Notes: a model not told the origin generated them from the letters alone. A DNA stretch of 51,001 bases from Macrostomum lignano (GCA_002269645.1 NIVC01003657.1:1-51001); one strand, 5' to 3'. Shown: positions 2,291 to 26,300, counted from the stretch's first letter. Numbers and translations are program-made.

Positions 2291-2355
2291 ATGAGGATGC
2301 TAGCGTCGGCTACCAGTCTCATGCTGGTTGCCACTGCGCTACTGACAACTGTCCG
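2291..2355 (+). CDS. Exon 1 of giant gene: signal peptide MRMLASATSLMLVATALLTTVR
   Basis: ATG at 2291, hydrophobic core, CG|GTGAG donor in phase with the acceptor at 2457 (continues RAHPKTG). Confidence 0.85.
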
Positions 2356-5300: not shown

Positions 5301-8300
5301 GGAGGGGAGGTCATCCTGACAGTTGGGAGGGGAGGTCATCCTGACAGTTGGGAGGGGAGGTCATCCTGACAGTTGGGAGGGGAGGTCATCCTGACAGTTG
5401 GGAGGGAGGTCATCCGAGAGTTGGGAGGGGAGGTCATCCTGACAGTTGGGAGGGGAGGTCATCCTGACAGTTGGGAGGGGAGGTCATCCTGACAGTTGGG
5501 AGGGGAGGTCATCCTGACAGTTGGGAGGGGAGGTCATCCTGACAGTTGGGAGGGGAGGTCAACCCGAGAGTTTGGAGGGGAGGTTATCCTGACAGTTGGG
5601 AGGGGAGGTTATCCTGACAGTTGGGAGGGGAGGTTATCCTGACAGTTGGGAGGGGAGGTCATCCTGACAGTTGGGAGGGGAGGTCATCCTGACAGTTGGG
5701 AGGGGAGGTCATCCTGACAGTTGGGCTATAGCTTGTGATGACTTTGCGCTAACTCACAGACTTTCACTCCATGTGCTAAGCGACTTACAAAGATGAGTAT
5801 GAATAATTGAAATCAATAATTTCGAACTCGCCAGCCTGCCAAGGCAGCGGCAGCAGGCAGTTCGGGCCATGCGTCCGGGGCTATCAGCAAGTGACGGTGA
5901 CCCTCTACAGGCTGAGGGGCGGCCGGTGCTACAAGAGCCTGAAAACTTTTCAACGGCCTTGCCGACTTCAATCCGAGTACCGTGAGTGACTTTTGCAGTT
6001 TGCTTTTAAAATAAGGGATTCAGGAAGTGACTCAGTAGCATTGAATGACCGAGATTCAGGAAGTGACTCAGTAGCATTGAATGACCGAGATTCAGGAAGT
6101 GACTCAGTAGCAGAGAGTGACCGAGATTCAGGAAGTGACTCAGTAGCATTGAGTGACCGAGATTCAGGAATTGACTCAGCGGCAGAGAGTGACCGAGATT
6201 CAGGAAGTGACTCAGTGGCATTGAGTGACCGAGATTCAGGAAGTGACTCAGTGGCAGAGAGTGACCGAGATTCAGGAAGGGACTCAGTAGCATTGAGTGA
6301 CCGAGATTCAGGAAGTGACTCAGTAGCATTGAGTGACCGAGATTCAGGAATTGACTCAGCGGCAGAGAGTGACCGAGATTCAGGAAGGGACTCAGTAGCA
6401 TTGAGTGACCGAGATTCAGGAAGTGACTCAGTAGCAGAGAGTGACCGAGATTCAGGAAGTGACTCAGTAGCATTGAGTGACCGAGATTCAGGAATTGACT
6501 CAGCGGCAGAGAGTGACCGAGATTCAGGAAGTGACTCAGTGGCAGAGAGTGACCGAGATTCAGGAAGGGACTCAGTAGCATTGAGTGACCGAGATTCAGG
6601 AAGTGACTCAGTGGCAGAGAGTGACCGAGATTCAGGAAGGGACTCAGTAGCATTGAGTGACCGAGATTCAGGAAGTGACTCAGTAGCATTGAGTGACCGA
6701 GATTCAGGAAGTGACTCAGTAGCATTGAGTGACCGAGATTCAGGAAGTGACTCAGTAGCAGAGAGTGACCGAGATTCAGGAAGTGACTCAGTGTTAGAGA
6801 GTGACCGAGAGTTGGAGTCAGAGTCAGGTGCGCCATGCAAGCCGCATCCGTGACCCGCCCTGAGCAGAGTGCATCGGCAGCGCTCTGAGCGGCGGCCAGT
6901 TTCTCACCTACGACGGCCAGCTGATTGACTTTCCGGGGCCCTGCGAGTATCTGCTGAGCGAGAGGCAAGGCCACTTCCAGGTGCGAGTCCGGCACGCCAT
7001 CAAATTCCCCAGCCTGCCGCAGCTCACCCAGCTTGACGCCATCGTCATCGTGATGGGCAACAGGAGCTACGAGCTCGCGAACAACCTCGTCTTTAAGGTT
7101 GGTTGGCTTCCTGAAACAGACTAGTTATCACTATAGCGAGTTCGATAGACAGCTTTCTTTAATACTAATCCTATTCGAATCCTCTCTTCCCCAGCCGCAC
7201 CCCCTTTGAGGTCCCGCATCCCCACCCTGATAACCATTCAGACCCCACTTCCCCACCCTAATCCGCATTCAGGCCCCACTTCCCCAACTTGATCCCCATT
7301 CAGATCCCACTTCCCCACCCTAATCCGCTTTCAGATCCACTTCCTCACCCTGATCCCCATTCCGATCCCACTTCCCCACCCTAATCCGCATTCAGGCCCC
7401 ACTTCCCCAACTTGATCCCCATTCAGATCCCACTTCCCCACCCTAATCCGCTTTCAGATCCACTTCCTCACCCTGATCCCCATTCCGATCCCACTTCCCC
7501 ACCCTGATCCCCATTCAGACTCCCCATCCAAAACTTGATCCCCTCTTAGAGCTTCATTCCTCAAACCATATCCATATACTAAAATTCACTTTCTAATCTC
7601 GATTCCCATGCCATTTTCAGACCCTCGAAGTCCCAATTCGACACTCCTAATCTCCAGCCAATCTTACCGAACTTACCGAAATCTTGCCGTGATCCCTTCC
7701 CCCGAGTAAATCAAAGCACTGATTCGCATTCACTACAATCTCAAGAGATCCCCCGATCCCGTTGCCGCAGGTGGGCGCCGTGGCGCAGCCGCTGCCCTAC
7801 TCGGACGCGGCCAGCGGAATCGAAGCGATCTACAGCGACGACGCGCTGGTGTTTGCGGCCGGCGACCTGTACGTGCAGATGCGCGGCTCGGCCGCCACCA
7901 TCAATGTGCGCTCCGGGGCCGGCGGCCTTCGCGGCATCCTGGGCAACTGCAACGGCAGCCCGGGTGATGACTTCACGAATAGCAGCGGCCAGGACGTGTC
8001 GCAGCAGTCAAATCCTAGCGCGGCTCTTGGGAACAGCTTCCGAGTGAGACCTGCTTGGGCTGGGGTCGGTGGGAGAGGGGAGAGGGGGGAGAGGTGGGTC
8101 TTGGTCGCGCGATGTCCTGAGCCTGAGAGTGGTTAAGAGTGTGCGCTGGCTGATAATGAAACAGTATCGTATCAGAATCATAAGCTTTCGGTCTAAACGT
8201 CACTATGTTTGCATTTTATTTTTATGAGCTTTGAATAAACTGTGAATTCCGTTGGCTTCAATTTCTTTCTAACTTTCTCTCTCCAGTTGACGACCTGCTC

Positions 8301-11300
8301 AACAGCAGACTGCTGCTCGCTGCCGGACACAGCGCCAGCTTGCGGCACCAACGCCAGCATGGAGGCGGCTTCCGTGTCCAACTGCGGCCACCTGACGGCG
8401 GACGCCATGTCGCCCTTTGCTCACTGCGGCCAGACAGCCATGCAGCCGCTGTTCAGGGCCTGCATCTCGCTCTACTGCCGAGCCAAAGGTAATAGGCAAC
8501 ATTTTATTGATGTTTGTCTTAAGTATGAAAGTAGATTTTGTAGGAATCCGAGTTTGATAAGTTCGAACTGCGCTCGTAGTTTTTACTTTTCAAGGTATAT
8601 TTAGAATTAAAAATACTTGAGGGCGCTTGGTTACCAGGCAATAAGGCGATATCACCAATCTTGATTAATTTCGCAGCTAACACAATGTGGCAACGCTCGC
8701 TTGTGTGCAGCACCCTCGAGGCTGCAGCCTTCCGTTGCTACTTGCAGCAGCAGAACGGCACCCAACGGAGCCGTTATCCGATATTCCGGTCGTCTAACTT
8801 CTGTCGTAAGCATCTTTTAGGACCAATACTCACATTTTTTTCATCCCAATTTTCAAGATCCCTGAAAGAAATCCGAATCTTTCGCAGCAAAATCCTGCGG
8901 TCACAATGCTGAATTCGTTGACGATGCTGACTTTTGCCCGAGGACCTGCGCGCGTCACTTCTTTAACAGCCAGTCGCTGGGCTGCGTGACGCCATTCGGC
9001 TTCAGATCAAGGAACGTGAACGGCCAGTCGCCGCTGCCAGGCTGCCAGTGCAAGCCGGGCTTCGTGCTGGATGGAAGCAACTGCGTGCTACCCAATGAGT
9101 GCGAGTGCATCTCCAACCTGTGCATCGACCGGCAAAACCGGACAGTCTGCGAGGCGTGGAAGGCGCAGGGCTACTGCGACAAGTACCCGCTGCAGATGCG
9201 TCGCTACTGCAAGCTCACCTGCGACCAGTGCCAGGCGCCGTGCCAGGACCAGATCAGCAAGACGACATGCCAAACGATCAAGTCGCAGGGCAGGTGCAGC
9301 GACAGCTTCTACAAGCAGATGTGCCAGCTGACTTGCAATCCGAGTGACTGCGGTAGGTTTCAAAACCAGGTTTAATCTTAATCACAGATCATAGAATCAG
9401 CTAGATTTTTTACTTGCAAAAGCAGAGCGTATCCTTTTTTCAGTAGTCTGTCTGTGCAGTGTCACTTAAATTTGAAGCTAAAATTACATTTCCTTCCTCG
9501 GGGTTTGCCGCTGCATGAGCAGGTGGGTAAAGAATGAGCAAGCAAGCGATGTACACAGGTGAACGCAAGACGGACGAAACTCAGCCTAGGGGCAGGCCCA
9601 ATCTGGCTTAGCCAATGAGAGAGCAGTAAGGAGAGAGGTCAAAGTCAGACACAAGCCAAACTGTTTATGGGCCTGGCTGGAGGCTGGGGCGCCACCCCTT
9701 TTCTCTCTTGCTCGCCATGCACACGTCCGCCGAGCACGATTTGTGTTTTTACGTTTTCCTGTAATTTTTGGATTTGAGCTCATTCCTTTTTATTAAATAA
9801 TTTAGAGCCGGAGGCAGTCTGGAGTCGTTACAGTAGAATGAGGATGCTGATATCTGCAGGCAGAAATTGTTTTCTTTCTGGGTCTGCTTGTAGAGACCCA
9901 GAGGCGATTGCTGCAGCTTCAAAAAAGTTTTAATAACTTCTAAAATTTAATAGATAGGAACTTAAATGTGAATATCTGGAATTCCACAATTCCAGAATGT
10001 CCGCCCTGCAAAACCGTCCGCGGCCCATGCGACTCGCAGAACAAAAACCGCCGGGTCGTCACGTACTGCTACGCTCGCTGCCAGCGCAGCAGTCCAGCAG
10101 CGTCTACGAACCCTGCGGCGACTGCCAGGAACAGCAGCAGCGGGTGGACACTCGTCCTGCAACTACTGCACTCAGCGAGCAGGTGACCAGGATTGTGCGG
10201 ACAGTTCGCGAGACCCGAGATGCGGCGACTGCCAGGAACAGCAGCAGCGGGTGGACACTCGTCCTGCAACTACTGCACTCAGGAGCAGGTGACCAGGATT
10301 GTGCCAGTTCGCGAGACCACAGGCGAGATGCGCTGCATTGAGGTGAACTCAAACATGACCACCAGGAGTCCCGGCTGCGAGTGCCAAACGAACACCAACA
10401 GGACTGTGTGCTACCGCAACTCTGAACTATACGTCATCAACACCGTATCAGCACCCTCCGCTGACTGCGCCACCTGCAACACCACAGTCACGGAGACCCG
10501 ACTGCGCAACGTCACCTGCACAAAGGTTGTTAAGCGCGGTGAGTGCGACCAAGTTGTCACCAAGCGACGGCCAGTGACAGTGACGCGCGGAATTGTGCGC
10601 AACTGCCAATGCGACCTGATCACGGAGCAGTATGAGGAAATGTGCGTCTGCCCGAAGCCGCACTGGACGCCAACAATTTGCCATCGCAACCGCGCAAAAC
10701 TGCGCTGGTTTGTAGCTTTCAGTCTCGTTCATGGCCGCTGCGTGCCGATTGTGAAGCCGCACAAGCACCGCGTGCCGTGTCCAAGGCGGCATCACGTCAA
10801 GTACAAATGCAAGAGCTGCAATCGATATAAGTTGCATTCCTGGTACGAGCGGCGTCATTGCCGTTGTATTCGAAAAAAGAAGACAGTTGAAGCTGGACGA
10901 TGCTGTGAGCCTTTTAGAATTCTTACTGCTACTCTCGTACTTACCTGCACTGTAATAAAACACTATGGCTTATTGTATCTTACTTTGGTTTAAATCTTTC
11001 TATTTTGCAGGCTGCCCTAAACCGAAGAAGGTACGCGGCGAGTGCATAGGCCAGCATAGGCGCATTTTAATCACCCATTACACGCTGGACAACTACGAAT
11101 GCCAGGAAGACACTCGAGAGATTTCTGAGCGCTGCGGCTGTCCGCCATCAAGGCCGATTAAAGAGTGCGACGGTGAGACTGGCATGATAACCGTAGGCAA
11201 ACTGGTCTTCAAGCTGGTCGATGGAACCTGCGAAGAGGTTCGACAAGTAAAGACAGAGCCTACAGGTGAGTGCAGTCTATCGTATCGTTTCGGGTTTTCT

Positions 11301-14300
11301 TTTCTAATGTAAATATGAGACGGCACTTTGGTTTCAGGGACATTCTAGATCAATAGTTTAAATTGACGAAAGTTGTTTTGAATGCAGCTTTGGATTAACA
11401 TAGGACCATTCTTTCATTACTAGCTTTCGAGCAGCAAATCAATAATCATCATCTCCATTACCTGAACTTAGTTTGCAAGAAGATGCGAGTGATTCGCCGA
11501 GGTCCGTGCCGCCTGTTGAAGGAGGACGACGTCGTCAAGTACCGGCGCGTGTACTACGAGCTGTGGAAGCGAATTCGTGGAGATTGCAAGTGTAAACACA
11601 TTAAGCGGTCAAAGCTGGTCGCCTGTGGCTGCCGCGAGCCTCAAGTGCGCGTGTCAAAGTGCCCGTCTGGCTGTCCCACCACCAGCCGCAGCTGTCCCGA
11701 ACATTGCTATCGGACACGAGCGGTGGTTGAATACCACCTGGAAGATGGCAAATGCCATCCCGAGGAGAGAGACCAGCAGGATCTGCCCTGCTGCTGCGAG
11801 AAGCCGCGTAATAAGCCGCCAGTTTGCGAGAACGGGAAAATTTTGGCTATTCGAAAATATCACGTCCAGCTAGTGGCCAACGTGAGTTAGCACAAAATCG
11901 GCTTCTTTTCGTTTTATATAGTACAGATAGTGGCTATATAAGTTAGAAAACACCAGGAAGATTAGCAGCGTAGCCTTTCAGTGATCGCAAAGGCGCCCTG
12001 TATTTCCTAATTAAAAACAGGCCTGCAAAATCAAGAAGCACGTCGTTCGCAAAGACGTTACTCGACACTGCGATCTCACTGACGTGCGCCGAATGCGTCA
12101 CGGAGACGTTATCATAGTGAAGCGGCGCGTTGTGCGCAACTGCCGCTGCATTTGGCGCGAGAGGCGAACCAGCTGCCCGGCTCGGTGCCCTCCGCCCTCC
12201 AAATTTGTCAGGTGCGACGGAGCCACAGGCGAACGGGTGCTCATCAAGCGATTTTACAAGATGCATTCCTGCCACTGCCTACCAGTGAAGCGAATTCGCC
12301 GACTGCCAGTTGACTGTCCGGAGCCGCGCATTGAGCGCCGGAATTTTTGCTTTAGAGAGAATCCAGCTGTCATAATAAGGCGCATTAACTTCTATGTGGA
12401 CGGCGAATGCCACTGCAAAAGAAGGTCTCTGAGAAGAGATACCGGTGTGAAGGAGAGGGTAAGTTGCTTCGAATGCTATTCGGGAAATGTCGCTTCAGCA
12501 GTAAAGAACTCTCGCTATAGAGTATGGCAGCTTTTTAACTCTGCTTTTCGGAAGAGCTCTACTTATGTTACTTACAGGACAAAAAACAAACAATATTTTA
12601 TACAAAAGATTTTAGCGGTTTTATCTGTCTTAAACTTCAGAGTCAATCTTAGCTAACTTCCAAGGCCTTTTTAATGTTTTTAAACATGGCATCTTTTAGT
12701 GTGTGATCAACGCCCGTCCGTTAGACTCCACTGCCACGCCAACCGCTTGTACAATGTCGTGACTCTATTCAAGCGAGACGAGGAGGGCCGCTGCGCACCC
12801 CATGAGTTCAAACACAGAGTTGAGACCCCGCCCTGCACAGGTCACGGCAAGAGGAAGAAGGTTAAGAAATGTGTCAACGGAAAGCTGATCCTGCTTATTA
12901 ACTGGCTTGAAAGGCGACACTGCAAATGCCACACAAGATACAGGAAGAGCGTTATCGGATCCTGCAATAGCTGTAAGTAGAGAAATTGGGAACTGTAAAG
13001 TGTGAAAAAGCAAAATATTATATTAGGGTGCTTTATGATACTCTGGCATCATGATACTTTTGTTGTAAGTTTCGGTGTTGGATTTTGGAAATTTCAATTT
13101 TCACTCAGTCGATATTTTGATAGTTTTAACCAGCTCTCTCTATTCTTTAATTGCAACAGACTGCGAGCACAGAAACCGCGGTAAGAGCCTTCGGACCCGA
13201 CGCCGCTGCAATAAGCACACAAACGAACTAGTTGTCTACCGCCTGAAGTGGAACTTTGACGGCGATCACTGCGTGCGCAGATGGGTCGCCACTAACAAGC
13301 GGGTGGAACCAGACTGTCCAGGACCTCGGCTTCGACGACTGCCCTGCGACCACGAAACTGGCAAGCAGCGCCTAGAGAAATTGGTGTATCATATGCGCAA
13401 CTGCAAATGCCGCGGTCCAAAGCTCAAGGTGTCTTACAGGAAGTGCACTTGCCGCGGTCCCAAGGTGCTCGGCCGGTACTGCGACCATCGGCATGGCTGC
13501 ATTGTTGTTCGAATGCTGATTCATAAATGGAACTTCGAGATGGATGCGTGTCACACTAGACTCGTACGAAAATCGATTCCAGTTCGTAAGTGCAGCTTGA
13601 TGCGAGTTTTATTGATTTTATAGTTGTTTATAAATGCTTGATTTCTCAATTTTGAAATATTTATATACTAAATGTTCCTAAATCTGCTACTCTTTAGCAT
13701 GCAAACATCACATCCATTCGAGCCACGGCGCCTGCATCCACGGTCATATGCAGTATCGTCGCACTCGTTATGTCCGCGACCGGCACAACTGCCGCTGTCG
13801 AAAAAAGATCGAAAAGAAACTAGTCAACTGCCGTGAGTTTAAAAACTACAAAGCATGTTTTCACTTTGTAAATCATGTTATTAGAGGCCTAAAACCATAA
13901 AAAACGAATAACTCTTCAGACTGCCCCGTTGTTATTCGTCGGAAAAAGTGCAACGATAGACGGAGTGTTGCAGTTACAAGAATTGTTTACCGAAAGTTCA
14001 GTACAAAGAAGCGCCGCTGTGTTACTGTTAAGGTGAAGCGCCACCACCGAAAGTGTCGCTGCCCAAAGCCCAAGGAGGTGAAGAAGTGCGTCAACGGAAA
14101 GAGGCTTGTTAAAAGATTCAGTTATCGATTGGTGGAGGGCGAATGCGAGAGAGACAAATCCTCGGAAACGTTCAGCATAGGTCAATATTTTTATTTTGAA
14201 CTTCTGTCCTCATCTAAACAAAATAATAACAATTTTAACATAAATACTTCTAGTTTGCCGCAAGCCGCCGGTCGTTCGATCCACTAAATGCGACGAGAAC

Positions 14301-17300
14301 ACGTGCTTTCGAAAAATTCTTACTTATAAATGGAAAGTGAATCCGAAAAATTGTCGCTGCCAACTTCAATTAGTGCATCAGAAGACGTGCCGATGCTGCG
14401 GTAGGTTTAGAACTTTTTCTGTTTGCCACTTATCGTATTCACGTATGCTTTAAAACTCAATATTTGTCCAACTATCCACAGGATGCCCAAAGCACAAGCT
14501 TAGCCGGACTTGCATCAAAGGGAAGATCTGGAAATTTACAGTCGTTATTCACTCTCTGCGGATAAAGAAATGCTCGAAAACTTGTCGCAGACATGTGACG
14601 CATCGCACCGAGCGAGTTCGCTGTCCGCAAAAGAAACGCGTGCACTGGTCTCGCTGCCACCGGTGCCGTAGTAGGAAGATGGTGACGAAATTCCGCAGCA
14701 TTGGCTGCCGATGCCGCCGCCGATTATACAAAACTGACCACTTTAGGTCCTGCTGCTGTCACGGAGGGACCCGCGTGAAAAAGCTCTGCCAGCAGTCTAC
14801 TGGTCGTTGGGTTAGACATATTAGTAAGAAAAAGTTGTCAGGGCACAAGTGCGTGCGGCACACTAAAGTCAAATACCTGCCACGACCAGGTACAGTTAAG
14901 AGTTCTTTTATTTGTTAATAAAAGTTCGCAAGTAGATTTATAGTGAAATAATTTTGATTTAAATTTTCAGTTTGTCGTCTGCCTGAAACGCCTGTTACAT
15001 ACGGAGTTTGCAACAGGACCACGTGCCAGCAAACAGTAACAAAAGTCGTTAATGTTTTGAACAAGCACACCTGCAGTTGTCACATGGTTAGCAAGCCAGC
15101 AGGAACCAGAACCTGCTGCTGCTTGAATACAACGCCTGAAATAAAGATTAACTGTGTCAACAACAACATGAAGCAACGCGTTACAGTGGCTCCCGTGTTC
15201 GATGAAGCCACACATACGTGCACCACTAAAACCGAAATCGCTACTGAATTGGTGACTTGCGGAGATGGGGAAACTCGCTCTTCAGATCCGCCGTGCACTG
15301 GAGAGACCCGAACAATTGTTAGGACAAGATCTGTTGTTGTTAACTGCGTCTGCGTTAACCAGACTGTTGACACCAGAACAGAGATGTGCACTTGCCCATC
15401 CCCAACTAAATGGACAGTTCGCTGTGATGTCAACAGCGGAAAGCAAGTGCTTACAAGAACCGTTTATAATTTAGTAAACGGTTCTTGCTCTGCAGTCACT
15501 GAAACAAAGCTCCGTACTGTGTTCTGCAACCAGAAACCACAGGTTGTACCTGTGTGCAACAGAGACAGCTGTATTGAGACCGTGACAACAACAGTGACAC
15601 GACTTGATATGTCTACTTGTACTTGCGTTCCGGACAGAACGATATCTACAAGACAGTGCTGCTGCCCAACTACGACGCAGACACGAAACGAATGCATCGA
15701 CAATCAAATAAATACCATAACTACCAGGCAGACGCTTAATGCGGTAACTCGGACGTGCGAGTCATCCGACACCACCACCAGATCGGGAGAGGTGCCTTGT
15801 AAAAATGAGACCCGAGTTAATGGGCCCTGCGATCGGGCAACTAGGAAACGCAAAATTAAGGTTACTAGGCGAGAAATAATAAACTGCCAATGTCAAACCA
15901 CTGGCGTTTCAGTTGTTCGTGAGCTATGTGGTAAGCGGTGCGAAATTTATCGATATCGTCTGTGATGCACTTCAAAATTGTTTGAATAAATTTTGCCACC
16001 ACTTTACCGTTTCAGCTTGTCCACCAACGCGGAAGAATCAAGGGCAATGCGATCGCAAAACTTGCATGCGCCAAGTGACATTGGTTAAGTTTAATGCGGT
16101 AACATCGAATAATGGCACTCTGCACTGCGTCAAGACTATAAGTCACCGCCAGCAGCGCTGTTGTTGCACTCCATTGGGTCATAAGCGAGTTCGCGTGCAT
16201 GTGCAGTGTGACAGAGAAACAGGAAATATCTTGATAAATAAAGAATGGAGCAAGTTTGTTGCTTCTACAAAACAATGCCGAACTTTGCACAAGTCTTGGA
16301 TCAAAGAAGTTGGTGAGTAGGACTTTTAGAAATACTTTTAGCTATTATTTTTCTGTAGTTTTCTTATTTATTATACGAGCTTTTCTCGGACATTCTACCC
16401 GACTTTTTATTTCCAGATTGTACCAGAAAGTTTGATGGAGAAGGCCACCTAGAACACCGAGGTCGGTGCAATCATCGAACAGGACGAAGGAAGATAATAA
16501 TGAAGTGGTATACGCACGACACACGCAAGTGCCGATGTAAACTTCACGTCCGAAAGCACTACAGAATCTGCTCATGCAAGCACAAGCGTGGTATGAAGCA
16601 TAAATACTGCGACAAGGAAACAAATGAGCTGGTGTCTGTGCGGAAATTCTTTGTTCTTGAAGACGATCAGTGCATTCCTCAGGAATCTCAGAAAAGAAAG
16701 CAAATTGTTTGCGCGACAAATAGACAGGTTAAAGAGTCCTGCAACAATTGTGACAACGTAAAAGTAATCAGTTATTATGTGCTGTCTAACTGTAAGTGTC
16801 GGAAAAAAGAAATAGTTGAAAAGACGAAGTGTTGCTGTCCAGAAGAGAAGTTTTACCGGAAGTGCCATCTTGGTAAAATTAAAATCACTACCGTTAAGTT
16901 TCGTCTGAGCGAGGACAAAAGAAGTTGCGAACGCATCGAAAATCACAAATACAGGCGTGTCCGTGAGTGATGACAGATTTTTCGATCTAATTTAAATTCA
17001 TATACTTCATCTCTATTGTGGCACCAGTTAATTGACGTCCATTACAATTGGACTCCATCCATTTTGCAGGATGTTCCCGAAAGCACAAACTGAAGCGTGG
17101 AAAGTGCAACCATGAAACTTGTTGGGCGAAAGACAAGCTCTTTAAATTCTATGCACGAAAATGTCATTGCCACAAGCAAGTTCACGTCAAAAAACGACGC
17201 TGCTGCTGTCCAAAACCAAAGCTGCGCACCCGTTGCCGAGGTCGAGGCATCCTTATACACGAAAAAACAGTATATCACTTGCACGATGGTCATTGCGAAC

Positions 17301-20300
17301 CTCAGTTAAGCCGAAAGAGAGTCCGAGTTCACTGTCCGGAGCCCAAACATCTGGGGAAGTCACATTGTAGTAGAAGAACTGGTCGGCGTTCTATACAGTT
17401 TAAGGTATTTAAACTGCACAAATGTCGATGCGTGCCGAAGCTGCAGCGTCGGTTTGAAATATGCGCGTGTCCGAGGCCACGTGTCGTACGCCAGCATTGC
17501 AAAGATGGACGTCATCATAGAGCAGTATTCAAGATCTATTTTCACCGCTATGAAGGCAGTTGCAAAGCAAAGAAAAGGTTCATTTACAAGGAGCCGTGTC
17601 GTAAGTACAATTTTATGTTTTTACTTTCACATTCATTGCAAATTTAACAATTTACATTACTTTGAACCGTTGCTATTGTCTACAATTCGATTTATAGACT
17701 GTCCCCAGCCCAGTCACAAAACGTTCTGTGATTCAATGGATGGCCATACTCTAGTTAAACAGACTGAGAGCTTCCAGATGACGATGCGCCACGGTAGAAG
17801 AGAGTGCATACATTCGCATCACGAGAAACCGCACAGAGTCCATTGTCATAAGCGTTCTGTACATCGTGGAGGGTGTTATGATGGTCAGCGAAAGATTTCT
17901 ATCACTGAGTACAAAGTACGGCACTGCAGGTGCATTAAAAAACAGCACGTTCGATACATTCGATGTAGACGAAGACTTCATCATAGGCGGCAACGCCGGT
18001 GTCATGATGGACGCATAATTAAAATTGCCTCCGTCTACGATCCTGATTCAGGTGAAATGCGTGAGCAGCGTCACGTGAAGCGCGTTCTTTGCAGAGAGCG
18101 GCCTAGAGTTGTTCCCCTGTCTCGAGGCTGCAAACTTCGAGAGGAGGATGGAGGCTTTTATAGAAAAGTTGCCGTCATCAAGAGTGTCCTTTCTGGCTGC
18201 CACTGTAAGCAAAAGCGCCGAATATCTTGGAGACTATGCCGTTGCCATGGAAGCAAAACGCTACATCGTTGTATACATGATTTTATTGAACACCAGTACA
18301 CCGAAAAGCACCATCGTCACAATGGCCACTGTAGACGGAGGAGAGAGAGGCGAACCCGAGAGCATCGGTGTTCGAAGCGTCCAGTTGCAATCAGAAAGAG
18401 CCGTTGTGATCATCACAGCTGTAAACGCCGAGTTTTCCTGCGCCGTTGCTATTTGAAGCATTGTAGTTGTCGATGCAAGCAACGGGTTGGGTACGAAAAT
18501 TGTTGCACGCCTCCACCCGTTAAAAAACGATACTGCAAAGATGGTCGTTGGCACTACATAAAAACCCGTTTCCGAATGCACAAGGACCGGTTGATTGGCA
18601 AGGACTCGGACAGTGGAGACGAGTGGAGAAAAATGGAAGTTAACCCTCACACAAAGCGCTGGTCAAAACGTGTTGATTGTCCAGAGCCAGAGATTCGCCA
18701 GACATGCAATCGTGATACAGGAGTTCTTACAAAGCGCATAACTGTTTATCGCAACATTCATTGCAAATGCCGGCCTCGTATGCGCACCGTTCATTCCCGC
18801 TGCCAATGCCCACCTCCGAAAACCCGCGCTGGTCACTGCGTTCGCGGACGTCGCCGCCTAAGACACACCAACTACCGATTGGGCAAGAATGGACACTGTC
18901 ACAGGCACCATACAGTGAGCTGGAAGCCTTGCGGCTGCCCAAAGCCCAGGAAAAAATATCGTTGCCACCGTGGACAAATTCAGATTTGTACGACCGTCTT
19001 CAGAAAGCACAGAGCTTGTCGTCCCAAGCGCCAATGTCGGTCCAAGAAGGTCCACTGTCCACCCCCGAAAACAAAGCGTGGAAATTGTTCGCAAAAAACA
19101 AAAAAGTTCAAGATATCTCATATACGATACACTGTCAATCAAAAGACCTGCAAATGTGACCGACATGTTGTTGCACGTTTTGCCTTCTGCAGTAAGTTAG
19201 AAACAGTTTCTGAATTTTCTTATAGAAGTAATTACTGTACTAGACCTAACTTGAAAAATGACAGACATAAATGTTCTGCCCAATTAAATATAATGATTCG
19301 AACCTTTCGGTTTCAGCCTGTCATCACCTAAAGCGGAAACAGAAAAAGTGCCATGGAAATGTTTGGGTAACAGTCAAAATTAACTACCGTCTAAATCAGG
19401 GCGAATGCGTACCCGACGAATCAGTTAGCCACAAAGCCGTCAAATGTCGGCGCCAGCTTACAGAGCTAGTTCCTGGATCATGCGAGCGGCGGAAAGGCTT
19501 GTCATCAAGCGGTACACAAATTGCTCGAACGCTGACTTCTGTGCCTGTCAAATGCCATTGCAAGAATCGAGTCCGCACTCATCGGGTTCCATGCATTTGT
19601 CACTTGATTAAAAAGTACAAAACACAAAAAACAACGGTGTGTCACTCTGACAGATGGCTGGTTACAAAAGTGCTGCAGTACCGCTTGGTCAAAGGAAAAT
19701 GCAAGCCACGTAAGCATAAGAAGTCAAAGACTATTCGATGTCATGGCAGGAAAATAAAGCAAACAGCTTGCTTCAAAGACGATCTAGGCGACAGCTTTCA
19801 ATATGAGTTGACGTTGCACAAAAGGCCTCGCCACTGTCGCTGTCACTGGAAAATTGTCAGAAAGGTTCGCAAGAACTGCGGCTGTCGGCCACCAACATCA
19901 AGTCGGAGCTGCGTGAGTGACAACATGTGGGAGCAAACCGTGATAAAATACACCAAGCCGGATGTCCCAAGTGCCAACTGTGAGCCCCGCACTTCGATTT
20001 CAACACGGATGGTTAACTGCACCACGCCTCGTACGAAAATTCTTTCTTGTAACACTCATACTTGCTATGCTAAGGAAGTAACAATTCGATACAAACCCAA
20101 GTTGTGCCAGTAAGTACCAATAAATACCCGAAATAACTATTACTTTGATTAAAAACCTAATAATCTCTTCTTTTGGTTGTGAAAAGTCTAAAATAGTACT
20201 TTTTTCCCATTTTTTGCAGTTGTCATCCTGTGCGCTCGTATCGAAGTCTCCGTTGCTGCTGCCCGGCACCAGTAGTTAGTCCTGAACGATGCAATGCAAC

Positions 20301-23300
20301 TAGCAACCAGTTTGAGCAAGTCACATCGCGATACACCTTGATTAATAACACTTGTGTGTTGCAGCAGAATACAACTGTTAGAACAGTGACTTGTGACACA
20401 CGATCTGGAGAGACGAACACCTCCGTGTGCAACACAACGAGCAACAGACAAGTGGTTACTATTCGCGACGTTTCTATTGTCAACTGCCAGTGTGTCACAA
20501 CCACCAGAAGCCTCACACAACCATGCTCATGTCCTTTAAATGAAAGAGTGGAGAAAGGTCTGTGCAATGGAACTCAGAACTATACAACTGACAAGTACTA
20601 CAGGCAACAATACAACTCTACAACCAGACAGTGTCTTGAGGTTCTGTTCAACTCTGTCCAGCGCCCATGCCTATGCAATGCGGTGTCAGTGAGAATAACC
20701 TGTATAGGAAATACACTGCGGCGTGTAACACACAGCGAAGAGCTAGTAAACAATACATGTGTCAAAAGAGCATATATCACGGATAGGGAGATAACTTGCG
20801 CAGGAAATGGAACATCCACACAGACTAGAGATGGCTGTAATTCGGTGACGAGAACTCGGTAAATTAATTTTTTATTTATTAGCATAGTATATATATTTAA
20901 TACTAGTACCTTAAACTTCATGCCAAATACAACTCAACAACTTAGTTTCTTTCGATAAAACTTCTAGTACAATCACGAGAATAAACTACGTTGTCGAGAA
21001 CTGCACTTGTGTGGCACGTTCAACTCGTTCAAGCGAGATTTGCAACTGCTTCGAACTACACGGAGGAAGACACGACGAAAGCACGTGCCGAGCAGACAAT
21101 GTGACAATTCGTCATATAAGCTACTACTATGATGGTCCCGGGGGCGTCTGTTTGCAACGTAACTTTACTACTGAACAAAGAATAAAATGCAAAGGTAAGA
21201 AAGAGGTTCCTCAGGGCTGCAATCGAGATTCGCGCAAAGAGGAGATTAGGATATACCACCTGGTACCAATCGCCTGCAAATGCGAGTGGTCCGAGCAGCC
21301 TCCGCGCTACGAAGACTGCAAGTGCAAAAAATCGTACAGCAAAAAGATCTGTCACCACGACAAGCAAATAATCGTTACAACTTACTATAAACTGGTGAAT
21401 GGGAAATGTCAAAAGCGAAAATACAAGAGGGTCGTGCCAATTGATTGCGACAAGAAAGGTCGGAAGACTGGTATACATTATGGACGGTGCAGCGAGTTTA
21501 GCGGCACCCGTCGCGTTGTCAAGTACGTGACCCGCGTGCACGGCTGTCACTGTGTAACAAAGCGTATCCGCCAAAGATGTCCATGCCGCTGCCCAAATAG
21601 CCGCACTTGGAGTGCCTGCAAGGATAATAAGGTCGTTACTTTCCGGCTCACTTACCAGCTGCGGGGCTGCCGCTGTGTCAAGAATTTAAAGAACTATGAA
21701 AGTCGGACCGTTTGTAAAAAACGTCGGGTTGCGAGAACTGCCTGCATCAAAGGCCTAGATGGAGATGGACATCTTACAGTAAGAATTCCATATAATAACG
21801 CATGACTTTCGAGGAGTTAACCTGGAGTTTATCTTGGGTTACTCAAGTACATGATAGTATTTTAATTTCAGTTGTTTTAAACTAGTTTAAAAGTACACTT
21901 TGAACAGTACACTTGTATGAAAGCGTGTAGCAACGTTTTATTAAGTTAACTTATGAATTTACATAAATTGTTTCTAAACTGAAGATTTGTGCATCATTTT
22001 CAAAAAAATTCAAGGTCGTGCACAGTCGTGAGCAAAGCGTCAATTGTCGCTGTCAGCTTGAAAAACACGAGCATCAGGAGGCGTGCCTGTGCCAAGCCAG
22101 AGAGAGCAAGAACAGAGAGTGCCAGGGAAAGAAGCTGAGCATCGTCACCACTCGACGTCTGTTGATCCAAGGCACATGCCAGCGAGTGGTGGTCAAACTG
22201 GAAACTCAGGCAGTTACATGCCCTTTGCAGTCGGTCCGTCCTGTTTCTGCCTGCAATAAGCACGGCTATCGTCTGCTTGAAAGGACGACCTGGAAGGCTG
22301 AAGATTGCCATTGCAAACCGCACGTGCGACTCGAAAAGCAGCGTTGCAACAGAAGTAAGCTAGAAGTGAAGAATGAGCCCTTTATAATTTTTTGCTGGTC
22401 TAGCGAGCCATGTCGAATATACAAGCCATGTTTACCCCCCCCCCGGTCAACATTTTTTTAGAGTGCGACAAAGGTCCCAAGGTAGTCCGGGAATCAAAAT
22501 GTGACAAGGAGACGTGCACTAAGCGTCTGTATTATTACTATAAGAACCAGAAGTGCCACAGTCGCCATTTTGCCATAACTGCCAAGTGCTGTTGTCCTCC
22601 TTCGCATCACGGCAAACAAAAGTGCGTTGGAAAAGCATTCGAAGTACGTAACTTGTTCTACAAACTGCAGCATGGTGTTTGCGTCATGTCGGCAGTGAAG
22701 TATAGACAGGAAATCGGTGTGTATCGCCCAAACTTAACTTGCTATTTTTTACTTATCATATGAGCATATACACTAAACTTGAGACTTATTTACCTTCAGA
22801 CTGTCGAAGGCAAGAAATATTTGAAACAGCCACTTCTGCCAGTGGAGATACGATAATCCTAAAGACTTGGCATGCCGTAAAGGACTGTAAATGTCAAAAG
22901 TACAAGAAAAAATTGCTCTCGAAACACCGAGGTAAGAAATCAAAATGACTGAATTTAAAATGTTTCAATATTTTAAGGCAATCTCATTTCTACCTAACAG
23001 AATGTCGACAACCTGAAGTAAAGCATGAATGCGTGAGTGTCCCAGAGCAGCGGCTAGTGCAAACTGTTACACGATTCACCAAGCATTCGAAGCACGGTGA
23101 GTGCCAGAAATGTGAAGAGGTCATTGAAAAGCCGATCAATTGTCCTTTGAACATCGTGCATCGAGGTCCATGCCGGAAAGACTCGTCACGTAAAGCTTTC
23201 GTTCGAGTTGTACGGCGCATCTCCTTCCGAAAGGTGGATTGTCGTTGCGAGCCTAAAAAGTCAACACATCATGAGGTGTGCCGCTGTTTCCAGCCCAGAT

Positions 23301-26300
23301 TTTCAACTCGCTGCCAGGGCAGCAAGGGCAGGATTCTGATCACGAAGCATCATTTTGAAGTCAGTCCAAGCGGATCCAAATGTTATGGGCGCAAAGAAAC
23401 TGATTCGATACAGGTGAATTGCGACTCGACATGGAGAGCTTCTCATAGGGGTCATTTTAGGGATATTAAATTTCACCACAGGCTGGAATGGCATGAAAAT
23501 GGTGAGCAAACAGAAGACAACATGCTGTCTCGAAGACGCAGGGATATCTCTGAAACACAGATCGAAGGACAAGATGAGGGCTCAGATAGCGGATGGGACG
23601 GTTCCTTTTCTAAATTCCTGGAGAGAGAAGTTCGGGTTGGCTGCAGCTGCCGTGTGCAGCGTCGGAAGCGGCACTGCCACTCGCGCTGTCCAAAGTCAAA
23701 GAAGTACTTAAAATGTGAGAACGGTCAAACTCTCTGCAGGGTAGAAACAACTTATCAGCGAAATGGGCGCTGTCGCTGTTCGTATCGTGTTCGCAAAAAT
23801 CCTGTAAAAGTTCACCTGCCTAAGCCCAAGGTTGTTCATCATGGCTGCCAAAAGTGTCAGGAGCGCATCGAGACGATCTATTATCGAAATGTCAATTGCA
23901 AAGCTAAGCGGTTCTGGCGCTGGCACAGCCGCCGGTGCTGCTGCAATAAAAAGCCTGTGGTCAGAGTGCACTGCAAGGCTGGCCAGATGCTAGTGTCCCA
24001 GAGACGAACCGAACGGCTAGACAAAGATGGCCACTGTGTACCGCAGTACGAAAACAAGTACAAGCTGATCAGCTGCAAAAGAATCATCAGAGAGAAGCCT
24101 CTGACAGCGTGCGCTGATGGTCATCGGGTTTGGAGGCGCGAGCTAGAAAAAACTGTTAATTGTGCATGCAAGCGCGGGTCTGAAAAGATCAGGCGACGGT
24201 GCGGATTCAAAGGTAATTGTGGTTCTAGATCGGGTTTTTTCAAAATTAATCTATTGATTATCCAGATAAAACTAACCCTAAACATATCAATTTTTTATAG
24301 CCTGCCACCCAACGGTCATCAAGCATGGCAGGTGCGTAAACTGTGCGAGCAAAGTGACAAAAACGGAGTTTATATTCAACTCAGCAACGCAAAAGTGCGA
24401 GGCAAAGAGGTTCCATCACAAGAAAAAATGCTGCTGCCCATCGCCTCGCTCAACAAAGAAGTGCATTGGAAACCGTCTGCTCCTGGTTACTATATCATAC
24501 AAATATCAGATTAGCTCTGGAAAGTGTGAAAAGTGCAAAAAGTCAACCGACATCACACATAGCATCTATAAGCGTAAGTCAAAAGCATCGTGCTCATGAC
24601 TTTTTATATAATAAAGACTAAGTTGCCAGCTACCTTTGAAATTAATTTTTGTTTTAATATTAAAGTTTAGCTACCGAAAACTTCAACAATGCTACTTCTT
24701 TTTGAGAGCTTTTTGAAAACAATAAAATCTGACTTTTTAGGCTGCCAGCGGTCGAAAAAGACAAAGATTGGAAGCTGCATGGAAAATGGCTTCCGTGTTA
24801 TTGTGACGATTAACCCAACTCTGGTGGACTGCGAGTGTCACAAGAAGCAGTCACTCAAGTTCGAGAGATGCCAATGTGAACTTCCTTCAGTGTCCGAGTC
24901 CTGTGTGCGCAACGGCACTCTCAAGTACCGAAGGGTTATCAAGCAAGAACTGGATGGCACCGTATGCAAGAAAATCAAGGAAGAGACTTATTCTGAGGTT
25001 GAATGCCCCGTCAGTACAACCAGTGAAGGAGTCTGCGACAGCGTCAGCTGCCAAAGAATCATAACGGACGTGTCTTATTCTGTTGAGAACTGTACGTGTC
25101 AAAGACTGACAACCCAGCGTGTGGAGACCTGCTGTAAGTTATGCTTTTTGGCTATTTTGTCATAACGACTACTGAAGTATTGTAGATATATACTAAGTTT
25201 TACGTTCTTATGGGTTAGAGTGGTACAGATAAAATCATCTTTTTGAGAAAAATCGCCAGTGGTTTAAAGTAGTGGTAAAATGAATATTTTAAACATTATT
25301 TCAGGTTGCCCGCCAACAATAAATGAAACGAGGACATGTGAACGAGCTGAAAACGTTTTGACGATCACGCGGCAGTATCAGGAATTCGACTTGAGAAATC
25401 GTGCTTGCGTCATCCGAACTAAAACTGACCGTGTCGGCACGATCTGCCCTCAGAACTACCGCTCTTTTGCCTCTCCATGCGATCAGTTTAGGAACAATAG
25501 CTTCTACAGAACTGTGAGCGAGTCCACCACAGTTGCATCCGGGTGCGAGTGCGTGCCACAGACCACCACCCGCACGGAACTCTGCGGCTGTGATTCAGCT
25601 CGGGATTACACCGTGTGCACACCTGAGAACCAGATTCTCACCTACCGAATCGAGTACAAACCCAATGAAAACAACACAATCTGCGAGCCAAATCGCGTCG
25701 TTCTCAACGTACGGGACGTCCAGTGTGACAGAACTCGTCGCTCAAATACTCCAAACTGCACCACAGGCACTCGCAGCGAGACAACTGGGGAGACGCGCAT
25801 AACCGTCGTCACAACTTGGCAGCGAGCCGGCAGAAACTGCACTTGCGCCACGCAGACGCGCTCGGAAGAGATTCTGTGTGCCTGTCCAGAAAACTCCGAG
25901 CCGAAAACTGTCTGTGATCATAAACGCCATGAAAAGTTGAATGTCACAAAAGTGTATCGGCTGCTAGTCACTGGAAGCATTCGCCAGTGCATCCCCTCCA
26001 AGGTTGTCACTCGTTTGGGTCGCATTAAATGCCAGGCACCCGTGGTGCAGCTTGGTCATTGTCAGTTTGGCCTAATGACAGTCAAAACTATTGTCCATCT
26101 CATCCACGGCTGTCACTGCGTGCCAAAGCACTTCAAGCACCAGCAGCGCTGCCAGAAACATCTGGAGCCCTGCATTAACAAATTGCCTGACTGGCTCTGT
26201 GCTGACCTCGACCGCAAGCATGATATCTGTACGCGCAACTTCACAGGCGCTGAGTCTGACCCAGAGTTGAAACAGTTGGCTGAGGCTAGCGCCCTCTGTA

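What the first reader, a model, noticed from the sequence alone, without database searches (positions are those of the whole stretch)
10270..25900. Block-copolymer design: four Thr/N-glycan-rich blocks at ~5 kb spacing separated by strongly cationic blocks
Seen: Thr-rich, near-neutral stretches start at ~10.3, 15.0, 20.3 and 24.9 kb, and the stretches between are R/K/H-rich on the same Cys scaffold. I count 10 N-x-S/T sequons in the ~210 aa of exon 28 (20220-20858) against 1 in the ~500 aa of exon 26 (17698-19191). Inference: surface chemistry is patterned along a rod, so glycosylated segments and polycationic segments could self-coacervate or bind polyanions. The spacing also suggests ancient super-repeat duplications.
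Basis: partly seen in the sequence, partly recalled or inferred. Interest (0 to 1): 0.75.

Follow-up and report, generated by a model that had tools for sequence, protein, structure and literature searches.

The report
Charge-patterned giant flatworm secreted protein
A roughly 5,700-residue secreted protein of the flatworm Macrostomum lignano is built from about 100 small disulfide-locked modules, whose surfaces switch in long blocks between strongly positive and neutral, sugar-site-rich; the pattern is real, but its function is untested.

Summary
The window is a whole 51-kb contig of Macrostomum lignano. The finding lies in one + strand gene (ATG 2291, stop 28080-28082; partly annotated as the hypothetical protein BOX15_Mlig008915g3).

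Its central 4,360 aa are about 98 modules of about 44 aa, in two alternating subtypes with 8 Cys per 88 aa. Three polycationic, His-rich blocks (1004, 1096 and 983 aa; net +14 to +20 per 100 aa) alternate with four near-neutral Thr/Asn-rich blocks (188-368 aa). The neutral blocks hold 31 of the array's 33 N-x-S/T sequons. Module-order permutations reject chance (P about 1e-5).

Cys and hydrophobic core positions are shared by both block types. The shift is at codon position 2, not position 3, so it is an amino-acid-level change and not a local mutation bias.

The module has no Pfam or PDB match. AlphaFold2 predicts it confidently as three-stranded beta-sheets (pLDDT 98 and 90). It defines a family found only in named flatworm proteins.

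The super-repeat idea gets no sequence support. Distant homologues and M. lignano paralogues lack the alternation. Polyanion binding by the cationic blocks, with glycosylated neutral spacers, is the most likely mechanism but is inferred only. Self-coacervation has no support: the array has no anionic block.

The parts
2291..28082 (+). Whole gene: a secreted protein of about 5,739 aa. It runs from a signal peptide (MRMLASATSLMLVATALLTTVRA) to the stop codon TAA at 28080-28082.
   Evidence: tblastn of gene models P0111, P0107 and P0001 onto the window; start and stop codons read; composite protein built.
2291..3385 (+). N-terminal exons: the signal peptide and a weak vWA-like domain.
   Evidence: Pfam VWA at 19.9 bits, below the 23.8 cut-off. 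P0111 residues 1-278 map here.
6864..8133 (+). VWD domain, split over two exons (6864-7121 and 7723-8133).
   Evidence: Pfam VWD at 23.0 and 22.7 bits on the single exons and 49.2 bits on the spliced P0111.
8866..9372 (+). Exon with a TIL-like C-terminal half and two ShK (ShKT) domains.
   Evidence: Pfam ShK at 29.3 bits, above the 20.9 cut-off; TIL at 22.7 bits, below the 24.5 cut-off.
9996..26155 (+). Repeat array: about 40 double units of about 88 aa plus about 8 half units. The introns are mostly phase 1 and lie just before the Cys of C-P-x-P.
   Evidence: Splice model; HMM tiling; the two half-module subtypes are homologous (hhalign probability 92%).
9996..10646 (+). T1: Thr-rich, near-neutral block (188 aa in the intact copy; +3.2 per 100 aa; 4 sequons).
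10114..10330 (+). 107-bp tandem duplication with nearby frame disruptions, specific to this contig.
   Evidence: the repeat finder family D1; comparison with P0111 and locus L002.
10649..14889 (+). K1: polycationic block (1,004 aa; +18.8 per 100 aa; His 5.9%; no sequons).
14971..16165 (+). T2: Thr-rich block (368 aa; Thr 18.5%; +6.0 per 100 aa; 6 sequons).
   Evidence: AlphaFold2 model of 15393-15929 has pLDDT 90.
16168..19880 (+). K2: polycationic block (1,096 aa; +20 per 100 aa; His 8.1%; 1 sequon).
   Evidence: AlphaFold2 model of 17207-17467 has pLDDT 98.
19883..21173 (+). T3: Thr/Asn-rich block (358 aa; +4.7 per 100 aa). It has 14 sequons against 6.5 expected from its composition.
21176..24872 (+). 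K3: polycationic block (983 aa; +14.3 per 100 aa). It includes exon 22800-22931 and an acidic, Cys-poor insert at about 23450-23640.
24875..25880 (+). T4: Thr-rich block (274 aa; +0.7 per 100 aa; 7 sequons).
26423..26554 (+). PAN/Apple domain following the array.
   Evidence: Pfam PAN_1 at 25.3 bits, above the 21.4 cut-off.
26750..28082 (+). C-terminal exons: a ShK-like motif (about 26935-27039), three more modules (27470-27874) and a terminal ShK-like Cys motif.
   Evidence: ORF translations; weak Pfam ShK hit; the P0001 C-terminus maps here.

Best explanation
**What is shown**

The region is the central repeat array of one secreted extracellular protein of Macrostomum lignano, about 5,739 aa long. 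The domain order is: signal peptide, vWA-like, VWD, a C8-like Cys-rich exon read by eye (no Pfam C8 hit), TIL-like, two ShK, the array, PAN, ShK-like.

The array is a chain of about 98 disulfide-locked modules of about 44 aa, each a three-stranded beta-sheet. The modules belong to a family that is absent from Pfam and from the PDB, and its named members are all flatworm proteins.

On this constant core the exposed residues have been changed block by block. Three blocks of about 1,000 aa are K/R/H-rich. Their charges are about +176, +205 and +128 at pH 8.1, and about 40% higher at pH 5.5 because of His. Four blocks of 190-370 aa are Thr/Asn-rich and near neutral. These neutral blocks carry almost all the N-glycosylation sequons, several of them at hairpin turns.

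**What is inferred**

The protein is probably multimerised through its VWD region into long filaments. The cationic blocks would act as multivalent binders of polyanions, such as sulfated glycans, glycocalyx, acidic partner proteins or negatively charged substrates. The glycosylated neutral blocks would act as regularly spaced, hydrated, non-binding spacers, giving a sticker-and-spacer layout.

The same species offers a precedent: its adhesion depends on a polycationic protein (Mlig-ap1) and a glycosylated partner, and heparin blocks it (PMC6410801).
For: - Gene structure and identity.
- Block pattern and statistics.
- One scaffold for both block types: hydrophobic columns correlate at r = 0.69 and Cys columns are shared. 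AlphaFold2 gives the same strand pattern for a cationic unit (pLDDT 98) and for two Thr-rich units (pLDDT 90).
- Protein-level change, not mutation bias: GC3 does not track block type, while codon-position-2 C is 0.14-0.15 in K blocks against 0.26-0.29 in T blocks.
- Constraint: coding divergence between the two near-identical contigs is 0.54%, against 2.6% in introns.
- Secretion and multimerisation parts: signal peptide; VWD at 49 bits; ShK and PAN above their Pfam cut-offs.
- Family: 105 proteins found with the module profile, 24 at E < 1e-30; every named one is from Platyhelminthes.
- Charge versus pH.
- Sequon hot spots at turn columns 27 and 72.
- Precedent for polycation-glycan cohesion in this species: PMC6410801 and PMC9229212.
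Against: - There is no expression, localisation, glycosylation or binding data for this gene.
- Cardin-Weintraub heparin-binding motifs occur only at the rate expected from composition.
- The resemblance to pleiotrophin/midkine is weak at fold level (E 0.07, TM 0.38) and absent at sequence level (hhalign probability 0.09%).
- The alternation is absent from M. lignano paralogues, from a transcript with the same domain order (P0005), and from parasitic-flatworm homologues. It is therefore not a general requirement of the family.
- Seawater ionic strength would weaken simple electrostatic binding.
- This contig's copy has frame disruptions at 10070-10330.
Confidence: 0.5

Rival explanations
1. 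The alternation is a historical leftover. An ancestral super-unit of about 3 Thr-rich double units plus about 11 cationic ones was duplicated three or four times and then diverged. The pattern would then reflect ancestry, not a selected spacing.
For: K-block lengths are 1004, 1096 and 983 aa. The chance of so small a range under random breaks is 0.0027, a post hoc test. Genomic spacing is 4.9-5.0 kb.
Against: - Composition-corrected similarity between modules is flat at all distances, with no peak at 15-18 units.
- Thr-rich units are not more alike than mixed pairs (2.70 against 2.45, P = 0.18).
- No long direct DNA repeats were found.
- Exon sizes differ completely between periods.
- The test has low power, because modules share only about 13% non-Cys identity.
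Confidence: 0.15
2. The Thr-rich blocks carry acidic (for example sulfated) glycans that pair with the cationic blocks of the same or neighbouring chains. The protein would then self-coacervate or self-gel on secretion.
For: - 31 of the 33 array sequons lie in the Thr-rich blocks.
- His adds about 40% more positive charge at granule-like pH 5.5 than at pH 8.1, which could act as a secretion switch.
- Polycation-glycan cohesion is documented in this species (PMC6410801).
Against: - The polypeptide has no anionic block; the Thr-rich blocks are near neutral or slightly positive.
- About 30 N-glycans would have to offset a net charge of about +600.
- Nothing is known about the glycan type.
- Paralogues are uniformly cationic and have almost no sequons.
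Confidence: 0.15
3. The protein is a mucin-type gel former. The Thr-rich blocks would be densely O-glycosylated PTS-like domains, and the cationic array would be a variant of the Cys-rich interdomains of mucins.
For: An N-terminal VWD region with TIL-like sequence, as in gel-forming mucins. Thr reaches 14-18.5% in the T blocks.
Against: - The Thr-rich blocks have only about 4% Pro and 20-23% Ser+Thr.
- They have 9-10% Cys and are predicted to fold into the same beta-modules (pLDDT 90).
- They make up only 27% of the array.
- No C-terminal cystine knot was found in this gene.
Confidence: 0.1
4. This contig's copy is a decaying duplicate, or partly an assembly artefact, and the pattern has no present function.
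For: Frame disruptions and a 107-bp duplication at 10070-10330 are absent from a 99.7%-identical contig. The two copies differ by 10 synonymous and 15 nonsynonymous changes, which is only weak evidence of constraint.
Against: - More than 4,400 codons of the array are open across 25 exons with canonical splice sites.
- Coding sequence diverges about five times less than introns.
- The lesions are confined to about 250 bp and could be indel errors of the assembly (inference, not tested).
- The block pattern is identical in the other gene models.
Confidence: 0.05

Closest known systems
Unnamed flatworm family of giant vWA/VWD/ShKT proteins (for example Echinococcus granulosus W6UV63, annotated 'Collagen alpha-3(VI) chain'; M. 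lignano BOX15_Mlig022224g1, Mlig026472g1 and Mlig022069; proteins of Sparganum, Echinostoma, Paragonimus, Dicrocoelium, Trichobilharzia, Cichlidogyrus and Protopolystoma)
   Same: They share the double module of about 88 aa (profile hits down to E = 1e-181 outside the locus, with 5 to 46 matched stretches per protein). They are combined with vWA, VWD, ShK or PAN domains and have signal peptides.
   Different: Their arrays are either uniformly polycationic and sequon-poor (P0005, P0030, P0116, P0020, P0012) or uniformly near neutral (the parasitic species). None shows the cationic/Thr-rich alternation. Identity in the non-repeat domains is only about 25-30%.
Macrostomum lignano adhesion proteins Mlig-ap1 and Mlig-ap2 (PMC6410801), and Tmed-ap3 (PMC9229212)
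   Same: They come from the same species or phylum, are very large and secreted, and contain a VWD/C8/TIL region. They have extremely cationic regions (ap1, ap3) that work with a glycosylated partner (ap2), and polyanions such as heparin interfere with this.
   Different: In ap1 and ap3 the cationic regions are low-complexity K/R or GRKHS repeats without a Cys scaffold. ap1 also has a C-type lectin domain and 17 EGF domains. ap2 has LDL and TSP-1 domains and 46 repeats of 255 or 221 aa. None of these is present here. In this gene the cationic and sequon-rich parts are in one chain of folded modules.
Pleiotrophin/midkine heparin-binding domains (TSR-like three-stranded sheets; PDB 2n6f, 2luu)
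   Same: They are the best fold matches of the predicted unit: small, basic, disulfide-bonded three-stranded beta-sheet domains in tandem. By my reading of the sequences, the Cys spacing is similar: C-x8-C-x19-C-x12-C here and C-x9-C-x21-C-x9-C in the pleiotrophin C-domain.
   Different: The match is not significant (E 0.07, TM 0.38). There is no sequence relationship (hhalign probability 0.09%, no Pfam PTN_MK hit). Those proteins have two domains, not about 98.
Gel-forming mucins and von Willebrand factor
   Same: An N-terminal VWD region with TIL-like sequence, very large size, and alternation of glycan-bearing and Cys-rich segments.
   Different: The Thr-rich blocks here are folded and Cys-rich, with only about 4% Pro, so they are not PTS domains. 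No cystine-knot C-terminus was found. Most of the protein is a polycation.

Membership tests
Flatworm CPxP/CxC double-module family (unnamed; defined here by profile A1) | Tandem units of about 88 aa with 8 conserved Cys: C-P-x-P-x6-C-x19-C-x12, then C-P-x-P-x6-C-x17-C-x-C-x10-C. | tested here: met
   About 40 full units and 8 half units tile residues 1-4309 of the array model. The profile was built from this gene, so membership holds by construction. 104 other proteins match it.
Flatworm CPxP/CxC double-module family (unnamed; defined here by profile A1) | Association with signal peptide, vWA/VWD, ShK and PAN domains. | tested here: met
Gel-forming mucin / von Willebrand factor D-assembly proteins | A VWD-C8-TIL assembly. 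| tested here: inconclusive
   VWD is met (49.2 bits). TIL is partial and below its cut-off (22.7 against 24.5 bits). The C8-like exon 8239-8601 gave no Pfam C8 hit.
Gel-forming mucin / von Willebrand factor D-assembly proteins | Unstructured Pro/Thr/Ser-rich (PTS) domains carrying dense O-glycans. | tested here: not met
   The Thr-rich blocks have Pro about 4%, Ser+Thr 20-23% and Cys 9-10%, and are predicted folded (pLDDT 90).
Gel-forming mucin / von Willebrand factor D-assembly proteins | A C-terminal cystine-knot (CTCK) dimerisation domain. | tested here: not met
   The C-terminal exons show PAN and ShK-like motifs only. A CTCK name appears only for a fragment of a paralogue.
Pleiotrophin/midkine (PTN_MK) family | Sequence match to the PTN_MK_N or PTN_MK_C domains. 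| tested here: not met
   No Pfam hit at E <= 10 for 29 units. hhalign of A1 against pleiotrophin gives probability 0.09%.
Pleiotrophin/midkine (PTN_MK) family | TSR-like three-stranded beta-sheet fold with conserved disulfides. | tested here: inconclusive
   Foldseek top hits are 2n6f (E 0.07, probability 0.97, TM 0.38) and 2luu. Model coordinates could not be read, so disulfide pairing could not be checked.
M. lignano adhesion protein Mlig-ap1 | Low-complexity K/R regions flanking a core of C-type lectin, VWD-C8-TIL and 17 EGF domains (PMC6410801). | tested here: not met
   The window has no C-type lectin domain and no EGF array. The cationic regions here are Cys-scaffolded modules.
M. lignano adhesion protein Mlig-ap2 | LDL-receptor domain, TSP-1 repeats, and 46 repeats of 255 or 221 aa (PMC6410801). 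| tested here: not met
   The repeat unit here is 88 aa (two modules of 44 aa). No LDL or TSP-1 Pfam hits were found.
   Only the sequon distribution can be shown: 31 in T blocks against 1 in K blocks, with T3 enriched above its composition. Occupancy needs glycoproteomics.

The most novel reading that the evidence does not exclude
The protein would be a natural, single-chain sticker-and-spacer polyelectrolyte. It is built from a previously unclassified, flatworm-specific beta-module that may be a new fold. Selection would have set both the chemistry of the blocks (about 1,000-aa polycationic, pH-tunable stickers and glycosylated neutral spacers) and their regular spacing. On this reading it is the key structural component of an undescribed secreted material of Macrostomum, such as a mucus, eggshell or cement, or adhesive matrix.
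Probability: 0.2. Interest if true: 0.75.

Novelty: new variant of a known kind. Interest (0 to 1): 0.55.

Why it matters
If the blocks work as inferred, this is a genetically encoded block copolymer made of folded, disulfide-locked modules, not of low-complexity sequence. Charge density, pH response (through His) and glycan placement would then be set module by module on a fixed scaffold. That would be a useful template for wet adhesives or coacervating materials. It could be tested in M. lignano, where in situ hybridisation, RNAi and transgenesis are available (PMC6410801).

Separately, the repeat module defines a large family of giant secreted proteins with no Pfam or PDB entry. It is found across flatworms, including Echinococcus, liver and lung flukes and a schistosomatid. 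At least one member is misnamed 'Collagen alpha-3(VI) chain'. Recognising the family would correct those annotations and point to a conserved extracellular component of parasitic flatworms.

Tried and rejected
- **Word-indexed homology searches.** Searches with exon 17700-19193, exon 25280-26677 and profile A1 all returned nothing. They did not even find the gene's own annotated protein, so these negatives say nothing. The exhaustive profile search did find the family.
- **Pfam.** Scans of the repeat exons and of 29 single units gave no family.
- **PDB by sequence.** The profile search gave no match.
- **Fold searches.** The PDB gave only weak pleiotrophin/midkine hits for one unit and nothing for two units. 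The viral library gave nothing.
- **hhalign against pleiotrophin.** No relationship.
- **Super-repeat tests.** Similarity by distance between modules, a clade test for Thr-rich modules, a DNA self-repeat search and an exon-structure comparison were all negative.
- **Heparin-binding consensus motifs and spacing of basic residues.** Both are at the rate expected from composition.
- **Regional mutation bias as the cause.** Rejected, because GC3 does not follow block type.
- **Identity with Mlig-ap1 or Mlig-ap2.** Rejected on domain content.
- **Literature searches by accession number.** They returned nothing. One tapeworm genome paper mentions the 'collagen alpha-3(VI)' name among tegument components, without identifying which proteins it refers to.
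- **Synonymous versus nonsynonymous changes between the two contigs.** Too few differences to be informative: 10 synonymous and 15 nonsynonymous.
- **Acidic 36-bp tandem repeat at 6017-6810.** I considered it as a possible anionic coding block. It lies in an intron of the P0111 gene model.

Full report
**Where this is.** The window is eukaryotic DNA with short introns. A cluster look-up identifies it as the whole 51,001-bp contig of Macrostomum lignano, a free-living flatworm. The contig carries PAA50356.1, 'hypothetical protein BOX15_Mlig008915g3'. The finding lies inside one + strand gene.

Chaining stop-free segments through GT-AG introns gave 25 exons and 4,479 codons without a stop. Most of the introns are phase 1, 73-284 bp long, and lie just before the Cys of a C-P-x-P motif. 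It matches the database protein P0001 except for one exon I had missed (22800-22931) and one alternative donor site.

Gene models from a near-identical second contig (P0111 and P0010) join the upstream exons to the array. The full gene therefore runs from ATG 2291, encoding the signal peptide MRMLASATSLMLVATALLTTVRA, to TAA 28080-28082, and encodes about 5,739 aa.

**Domain order.**
- A weak vWA-like region.
- A few isolated modules.
- VWD, at 49 bits on the spliced protein.
- A C8-like exon that gave no Pfam C8 hit.
- TIL-like sequence below its cut-off, and two ShK domains.
- The repeat array, 9996-26155.
- PAN.
- A ShK-like motif, three more modules and a terminal ShK-like motif.

**What the repeat is.** An HMM built iteratively on the protein tiles residues 1-4309 of the array model with about 40 units of about 88 aa and about 8 half units. 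Each unit has 8 conserved Cys: C-P-x-P-x6-C-x19-C-x12, then C-P-x-P-x6-C-x17-C-x-C-x10-C. The two halves are homologous (hhalign probability 92%, E = 6e-7). The basic module is therefore about 44 aa, and there are about 98 of them.

The units are very diverged, with mean identity outside the Cys columns of 13%. Pfam has no model for them and no PDB sequence matches.

AlphaFold2 used only the 29 paralogous units as its alignment, and it predicts a cationic unit with pLDDT 98: two three-stranded antiparallel sheets. A two-unit stretch from a Thr-rich block gives pLDDT 90 with the same strand pattern four times over. Its pTM is only 0.43, which fits a non-globular, elongated chain.

Foldseek finds nothing significant. 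The best hits for one unit are pleiotrophin (E 0.07, TM 0.38) and midkine. For two units every hit has TM below 0.22. A profile comparison with the pleiotrophin sequence shows no relationship.

**The observation.** Sliding windows and per-unit tables show the four blocks clearly. On the composite protein the blocks are:

| Block | Length (aa) | Net charge per 100 aa | Notes |
|---|---|---|---|
| T1 | 188 | +3.2 | Thr 13.8% |
| K1 | 1,004 | +18.8 | |
| T2 | 368 | +6.0 | Thr 18.5% |
| K2 | 1,096 | +20.0 | His 8.1% |
| T3 | 358 | +4.7 | |
| K3 | 983 | +14.3 | |
| T4 | 274 | +0.7 | |
| tail | 89 | +12.4 | moderately basic |

Cys is 9-10% in all seven T and K blocks (7.9% in the 89-aa tail). The array has 33 sequons: 31 in the 1,188 aa of T blocks, 1 in the 3,083 aa of K blocks and 1 in the tail (P = 1.4e-16).

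Shuffling the order of the units gives a Thr lag-1 autocorrelation of 0.57 (0 of 20,000 shuffles reach it) and 8 runs against 19.5 expected (P = 1e-5). Transitions between block types take about one unit.

Shuffling residues within blocks shows that sequon density mostly follows composition. T3 is enriched (14 observed, 6.5 expected; P = 0.0004). The K blocks together are depleted (1 observed, about 8 expected; P = 0.003).

Several sequons recur at hairpin-turn columns: N-x-S/T-C at column 27, four times, and N-C-T-C at column 72, three times. The Asn at column 72 is also common in cationic units, where K, R or H follows the Cys and so no sequon forms.

**Same scaffold, different surface.** Hydrophobic columns correlate between cationic and Thr-rich units (r = 0.69), and the hydrophobic fraction is unchanged (26% and 24%). 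K/R/H falls from 36% to 14% and T/S/N rises from 14% to 35%.

Third-codon-position GC drifts smoothly along the gene and does not follow block type. Codon-position-2 C is 0.14-0.15 in K blocks and 0.26-0.29 in T blocks. The pattern is therefore set at the protein level and is not caused by regional mutation bias.

The Thr-rich blocks are not mucin-like. Pro is about 4%, Ser+Thr is 20-23%, and they are predicted to be folded.

His makes the cationic blocks pH-sensitive: +176, +205 and +128 at pH 8.1, against +238, +291 and +183 at pH 5.5.

**Super-repeat hypothesis.**
- Composition-corrected similarity between units has a flat mean at every distance (2.4-3.0, overall mean 2.68), with no peak at 15-18 units.
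- Thr-rich units are not closer to each other (2.70) than to cationic units (2.45); P = 0.18.
- The only long direct DNA repeat in the array is a local 107-bp duplication.
- Exon sizes differ completely between periods: many exons of 1 to 1.5 units in the first period, and exons of 320 and 498 aa in the second.

The one point in its favour is regular spacing. The three cationic blocks differ by at most 113 aa (P = 0.0027 under random breaks, a post hoc test). With units at saturation divergence the similarity tests have little power. An ancient duplication therefore cannot be excluded, but nothing in the sequence supports it.

**Relatives.** The word-indexed search found nothing, not even the gene's own product, so its negatives are not informative. 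The exhaustive profile search found 105 proteins, 24 of them at E < 1e-30.

Every named member is a flatworm protein. Several are M. lignano paralogues. The others come from Echinococcus granulosus (W6UV63, named 'Collagen alpha-3(VI) chain'), Sparganum, Echinostoma, Paragonimus, Dicrocoelium, Trichobilharzia, Cichlidogyrus and Protopolystoma.

Outside the near-identical copies of this locus, the closest relatives share only about 25-30% identity in the VWD-to-ShK region.

Tiling all of them with the module HMM shows the cationic/Thr-rich alternation only in models of this locus:
- Paralogues P0030, P0116 and P0123 are cationic throughout and sequon-poor.
- An intronless transcript contig from run SRR8820788 (P0005) is also cationic throughout and sequon-poor. 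Its organism is unknown and its domain order is the same as here, apart from the vWA-like region, which it lacks.
- The parasitic-flatworm proteins are near neutral, with no autocorrelation of composition along the chain.

Orthologues between 50% and 90% identity could be hidden by the clustering of the library, so conservation in close relatives remains untested.

**State of this copy.** A second contig end (NIVC01000099.1, locus L002) is 99.7% identical over window 1-10214 and 98.5% identical over 10221-16408. It lacks the 107-bp duplication, and its reading frame through T1 is intact. The window copy needs two or three frame changes between 10070 and 10330. These may be assembly errors or real lesions. 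The other 4,400 or so codons are open. Introns differ about five times more than coding sequence between the two copies (2.6% against 0.54%).

**Mechanism.** The following are shown:
- a secreted protein with a VWD region;
- a chain of about 98 folded, disulfide-rich modules;
- block-wise exchange of surface chemistry;
- sequons confined to the neutral blocks.

The following are inferred:
- multimerisation into filaments through the VWD region, by analogy with mucins, von Willebrand factor and the flatworm adhesive proteins;
- cationic blocks acting as multivalent polyanion binders;
- Thr/Asn blocks acting as glycosylated, non-binding spacers.

The same species provides a precedent. Its adhesion uses a polycationic protein and a glycosylated partner, and heparin blocks it (PMC6410801; PMC9229212). 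Those proteins use low-complexity K/R or GRKHS regions and have different domains, so this gene is not one of them.

Specific heparin-binding motifs are not enriched beyond composition. I rate the functional reading at about 0.5 and the structural description at about 0.9.

**Verdict.** The gene is an uncharacterised member of an undescribed, apparently flatworm-restricted module family, and among the sequences available the block alternation is specific to this locus. I rate it a new variant of a known kind (large modular secreted proteins with alternating glycan-bearing and Cys-rich or cationic segments), with interest 0.55.

Noticed in passing
window 10070-10330: A 107-bp tandem duplication (10114-10175 and 10221-10282 are identical) plus small indels break the reading frame of the first array exon. 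A 99.7%-identical contig end (NIVC01000099.1) has one copy and an intact frame. This is either an assembly error or a real lesion.
   Followed up: partly
window 5080-5725, 6017-6810, 7186-7543: Three minisatellites lie in introns of the 5' part of the gene: 25 bp x 26, 36 bp x 22 and 31 bp x about 11. The 36-bp array is open in several frames and would encode an acidic DSGSDSVALSDR repeat, but the P0111 gene model splices it out.
   Followed up: partly
window 22800-22931: A 132-bp phase-1 exon (DCRRQEIFETATSASGDTIILKTWHAVKDCKCQKYKKKLLSKHRE) is present in database model P0001. My splice search missed it.
   Followed up: yes
window about 23450-23640 (K3 block): An acidic, Cys-poor insert (…EWHENGEQTEDNMLSRRRRDISETQIEGQDEGSDSGWDGS…) interrupts the module scaffold. 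A smaller one (GKDSDSGDEW) lies at about 18.6 kb in K2. These are the only acidic patches in the array.
   Followed up: no
window 28619-29111 and 29222-29631: Two near-perfect 18-bp tandem arrays (27 and 23 copies, 99-100% matches) lie just downstream of the gene's stop codon.
   Followed up: no
window 31316-31750: An open segment encodes a WSC domain (Pfam 64.5 bits). It probably belongs to a separate downstream gene.
   Followed up: partly
window 34516-35382 and 49217-50859: Probable retroelement remnants. The first has reverse transcriptase plus RNase H (71 and 40 bits). The second is a long ORF with a SAP domain next to an ORF that looked retroelement-like by eye (no Pfam hit).
   Followed up: partly
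window 42787-46745: Exons that look like a Cys-loop ligand-gated ion channel. The ligand-binding domain scores 74 bits at 42787-43431; the three other ORFs up to 46745 gave no Pfam hit. An 11-bp microsatellite (43241-43661, 38 copies) abuts the first exon, and the open frame runs into it.
   Followed up: partly
P0002 (Echinococcus granulosus W6UV63 / XP_024353468.1): This 5,275-aa homologue is named 'Collagen alpha-3(VI) chain', apparently because of its vWA domain. It is made of 34-46 of the modules described here and is not a collagen. A Taenia genome paper lists 'collagen alpha-3(VI) chain' among tegument components (PMC8384839); whether that refers to homologues of this protein is not established.
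   Followed up: partly
locus L001 (Logan SRR8820788 contig, 12,864 nt): An intronless transcript encodes a 4,171-aa protein. Its domain order (VWD to two ShK, array, ShK, PAN) matches this gene from the VWD onward; it starts at the VWD and has no vWA-like region. It is uniformly polycationic (+22.5 per 100 aa) and has no Thr-rich blocks. The source organism could not be identified.
   Followed up: partly
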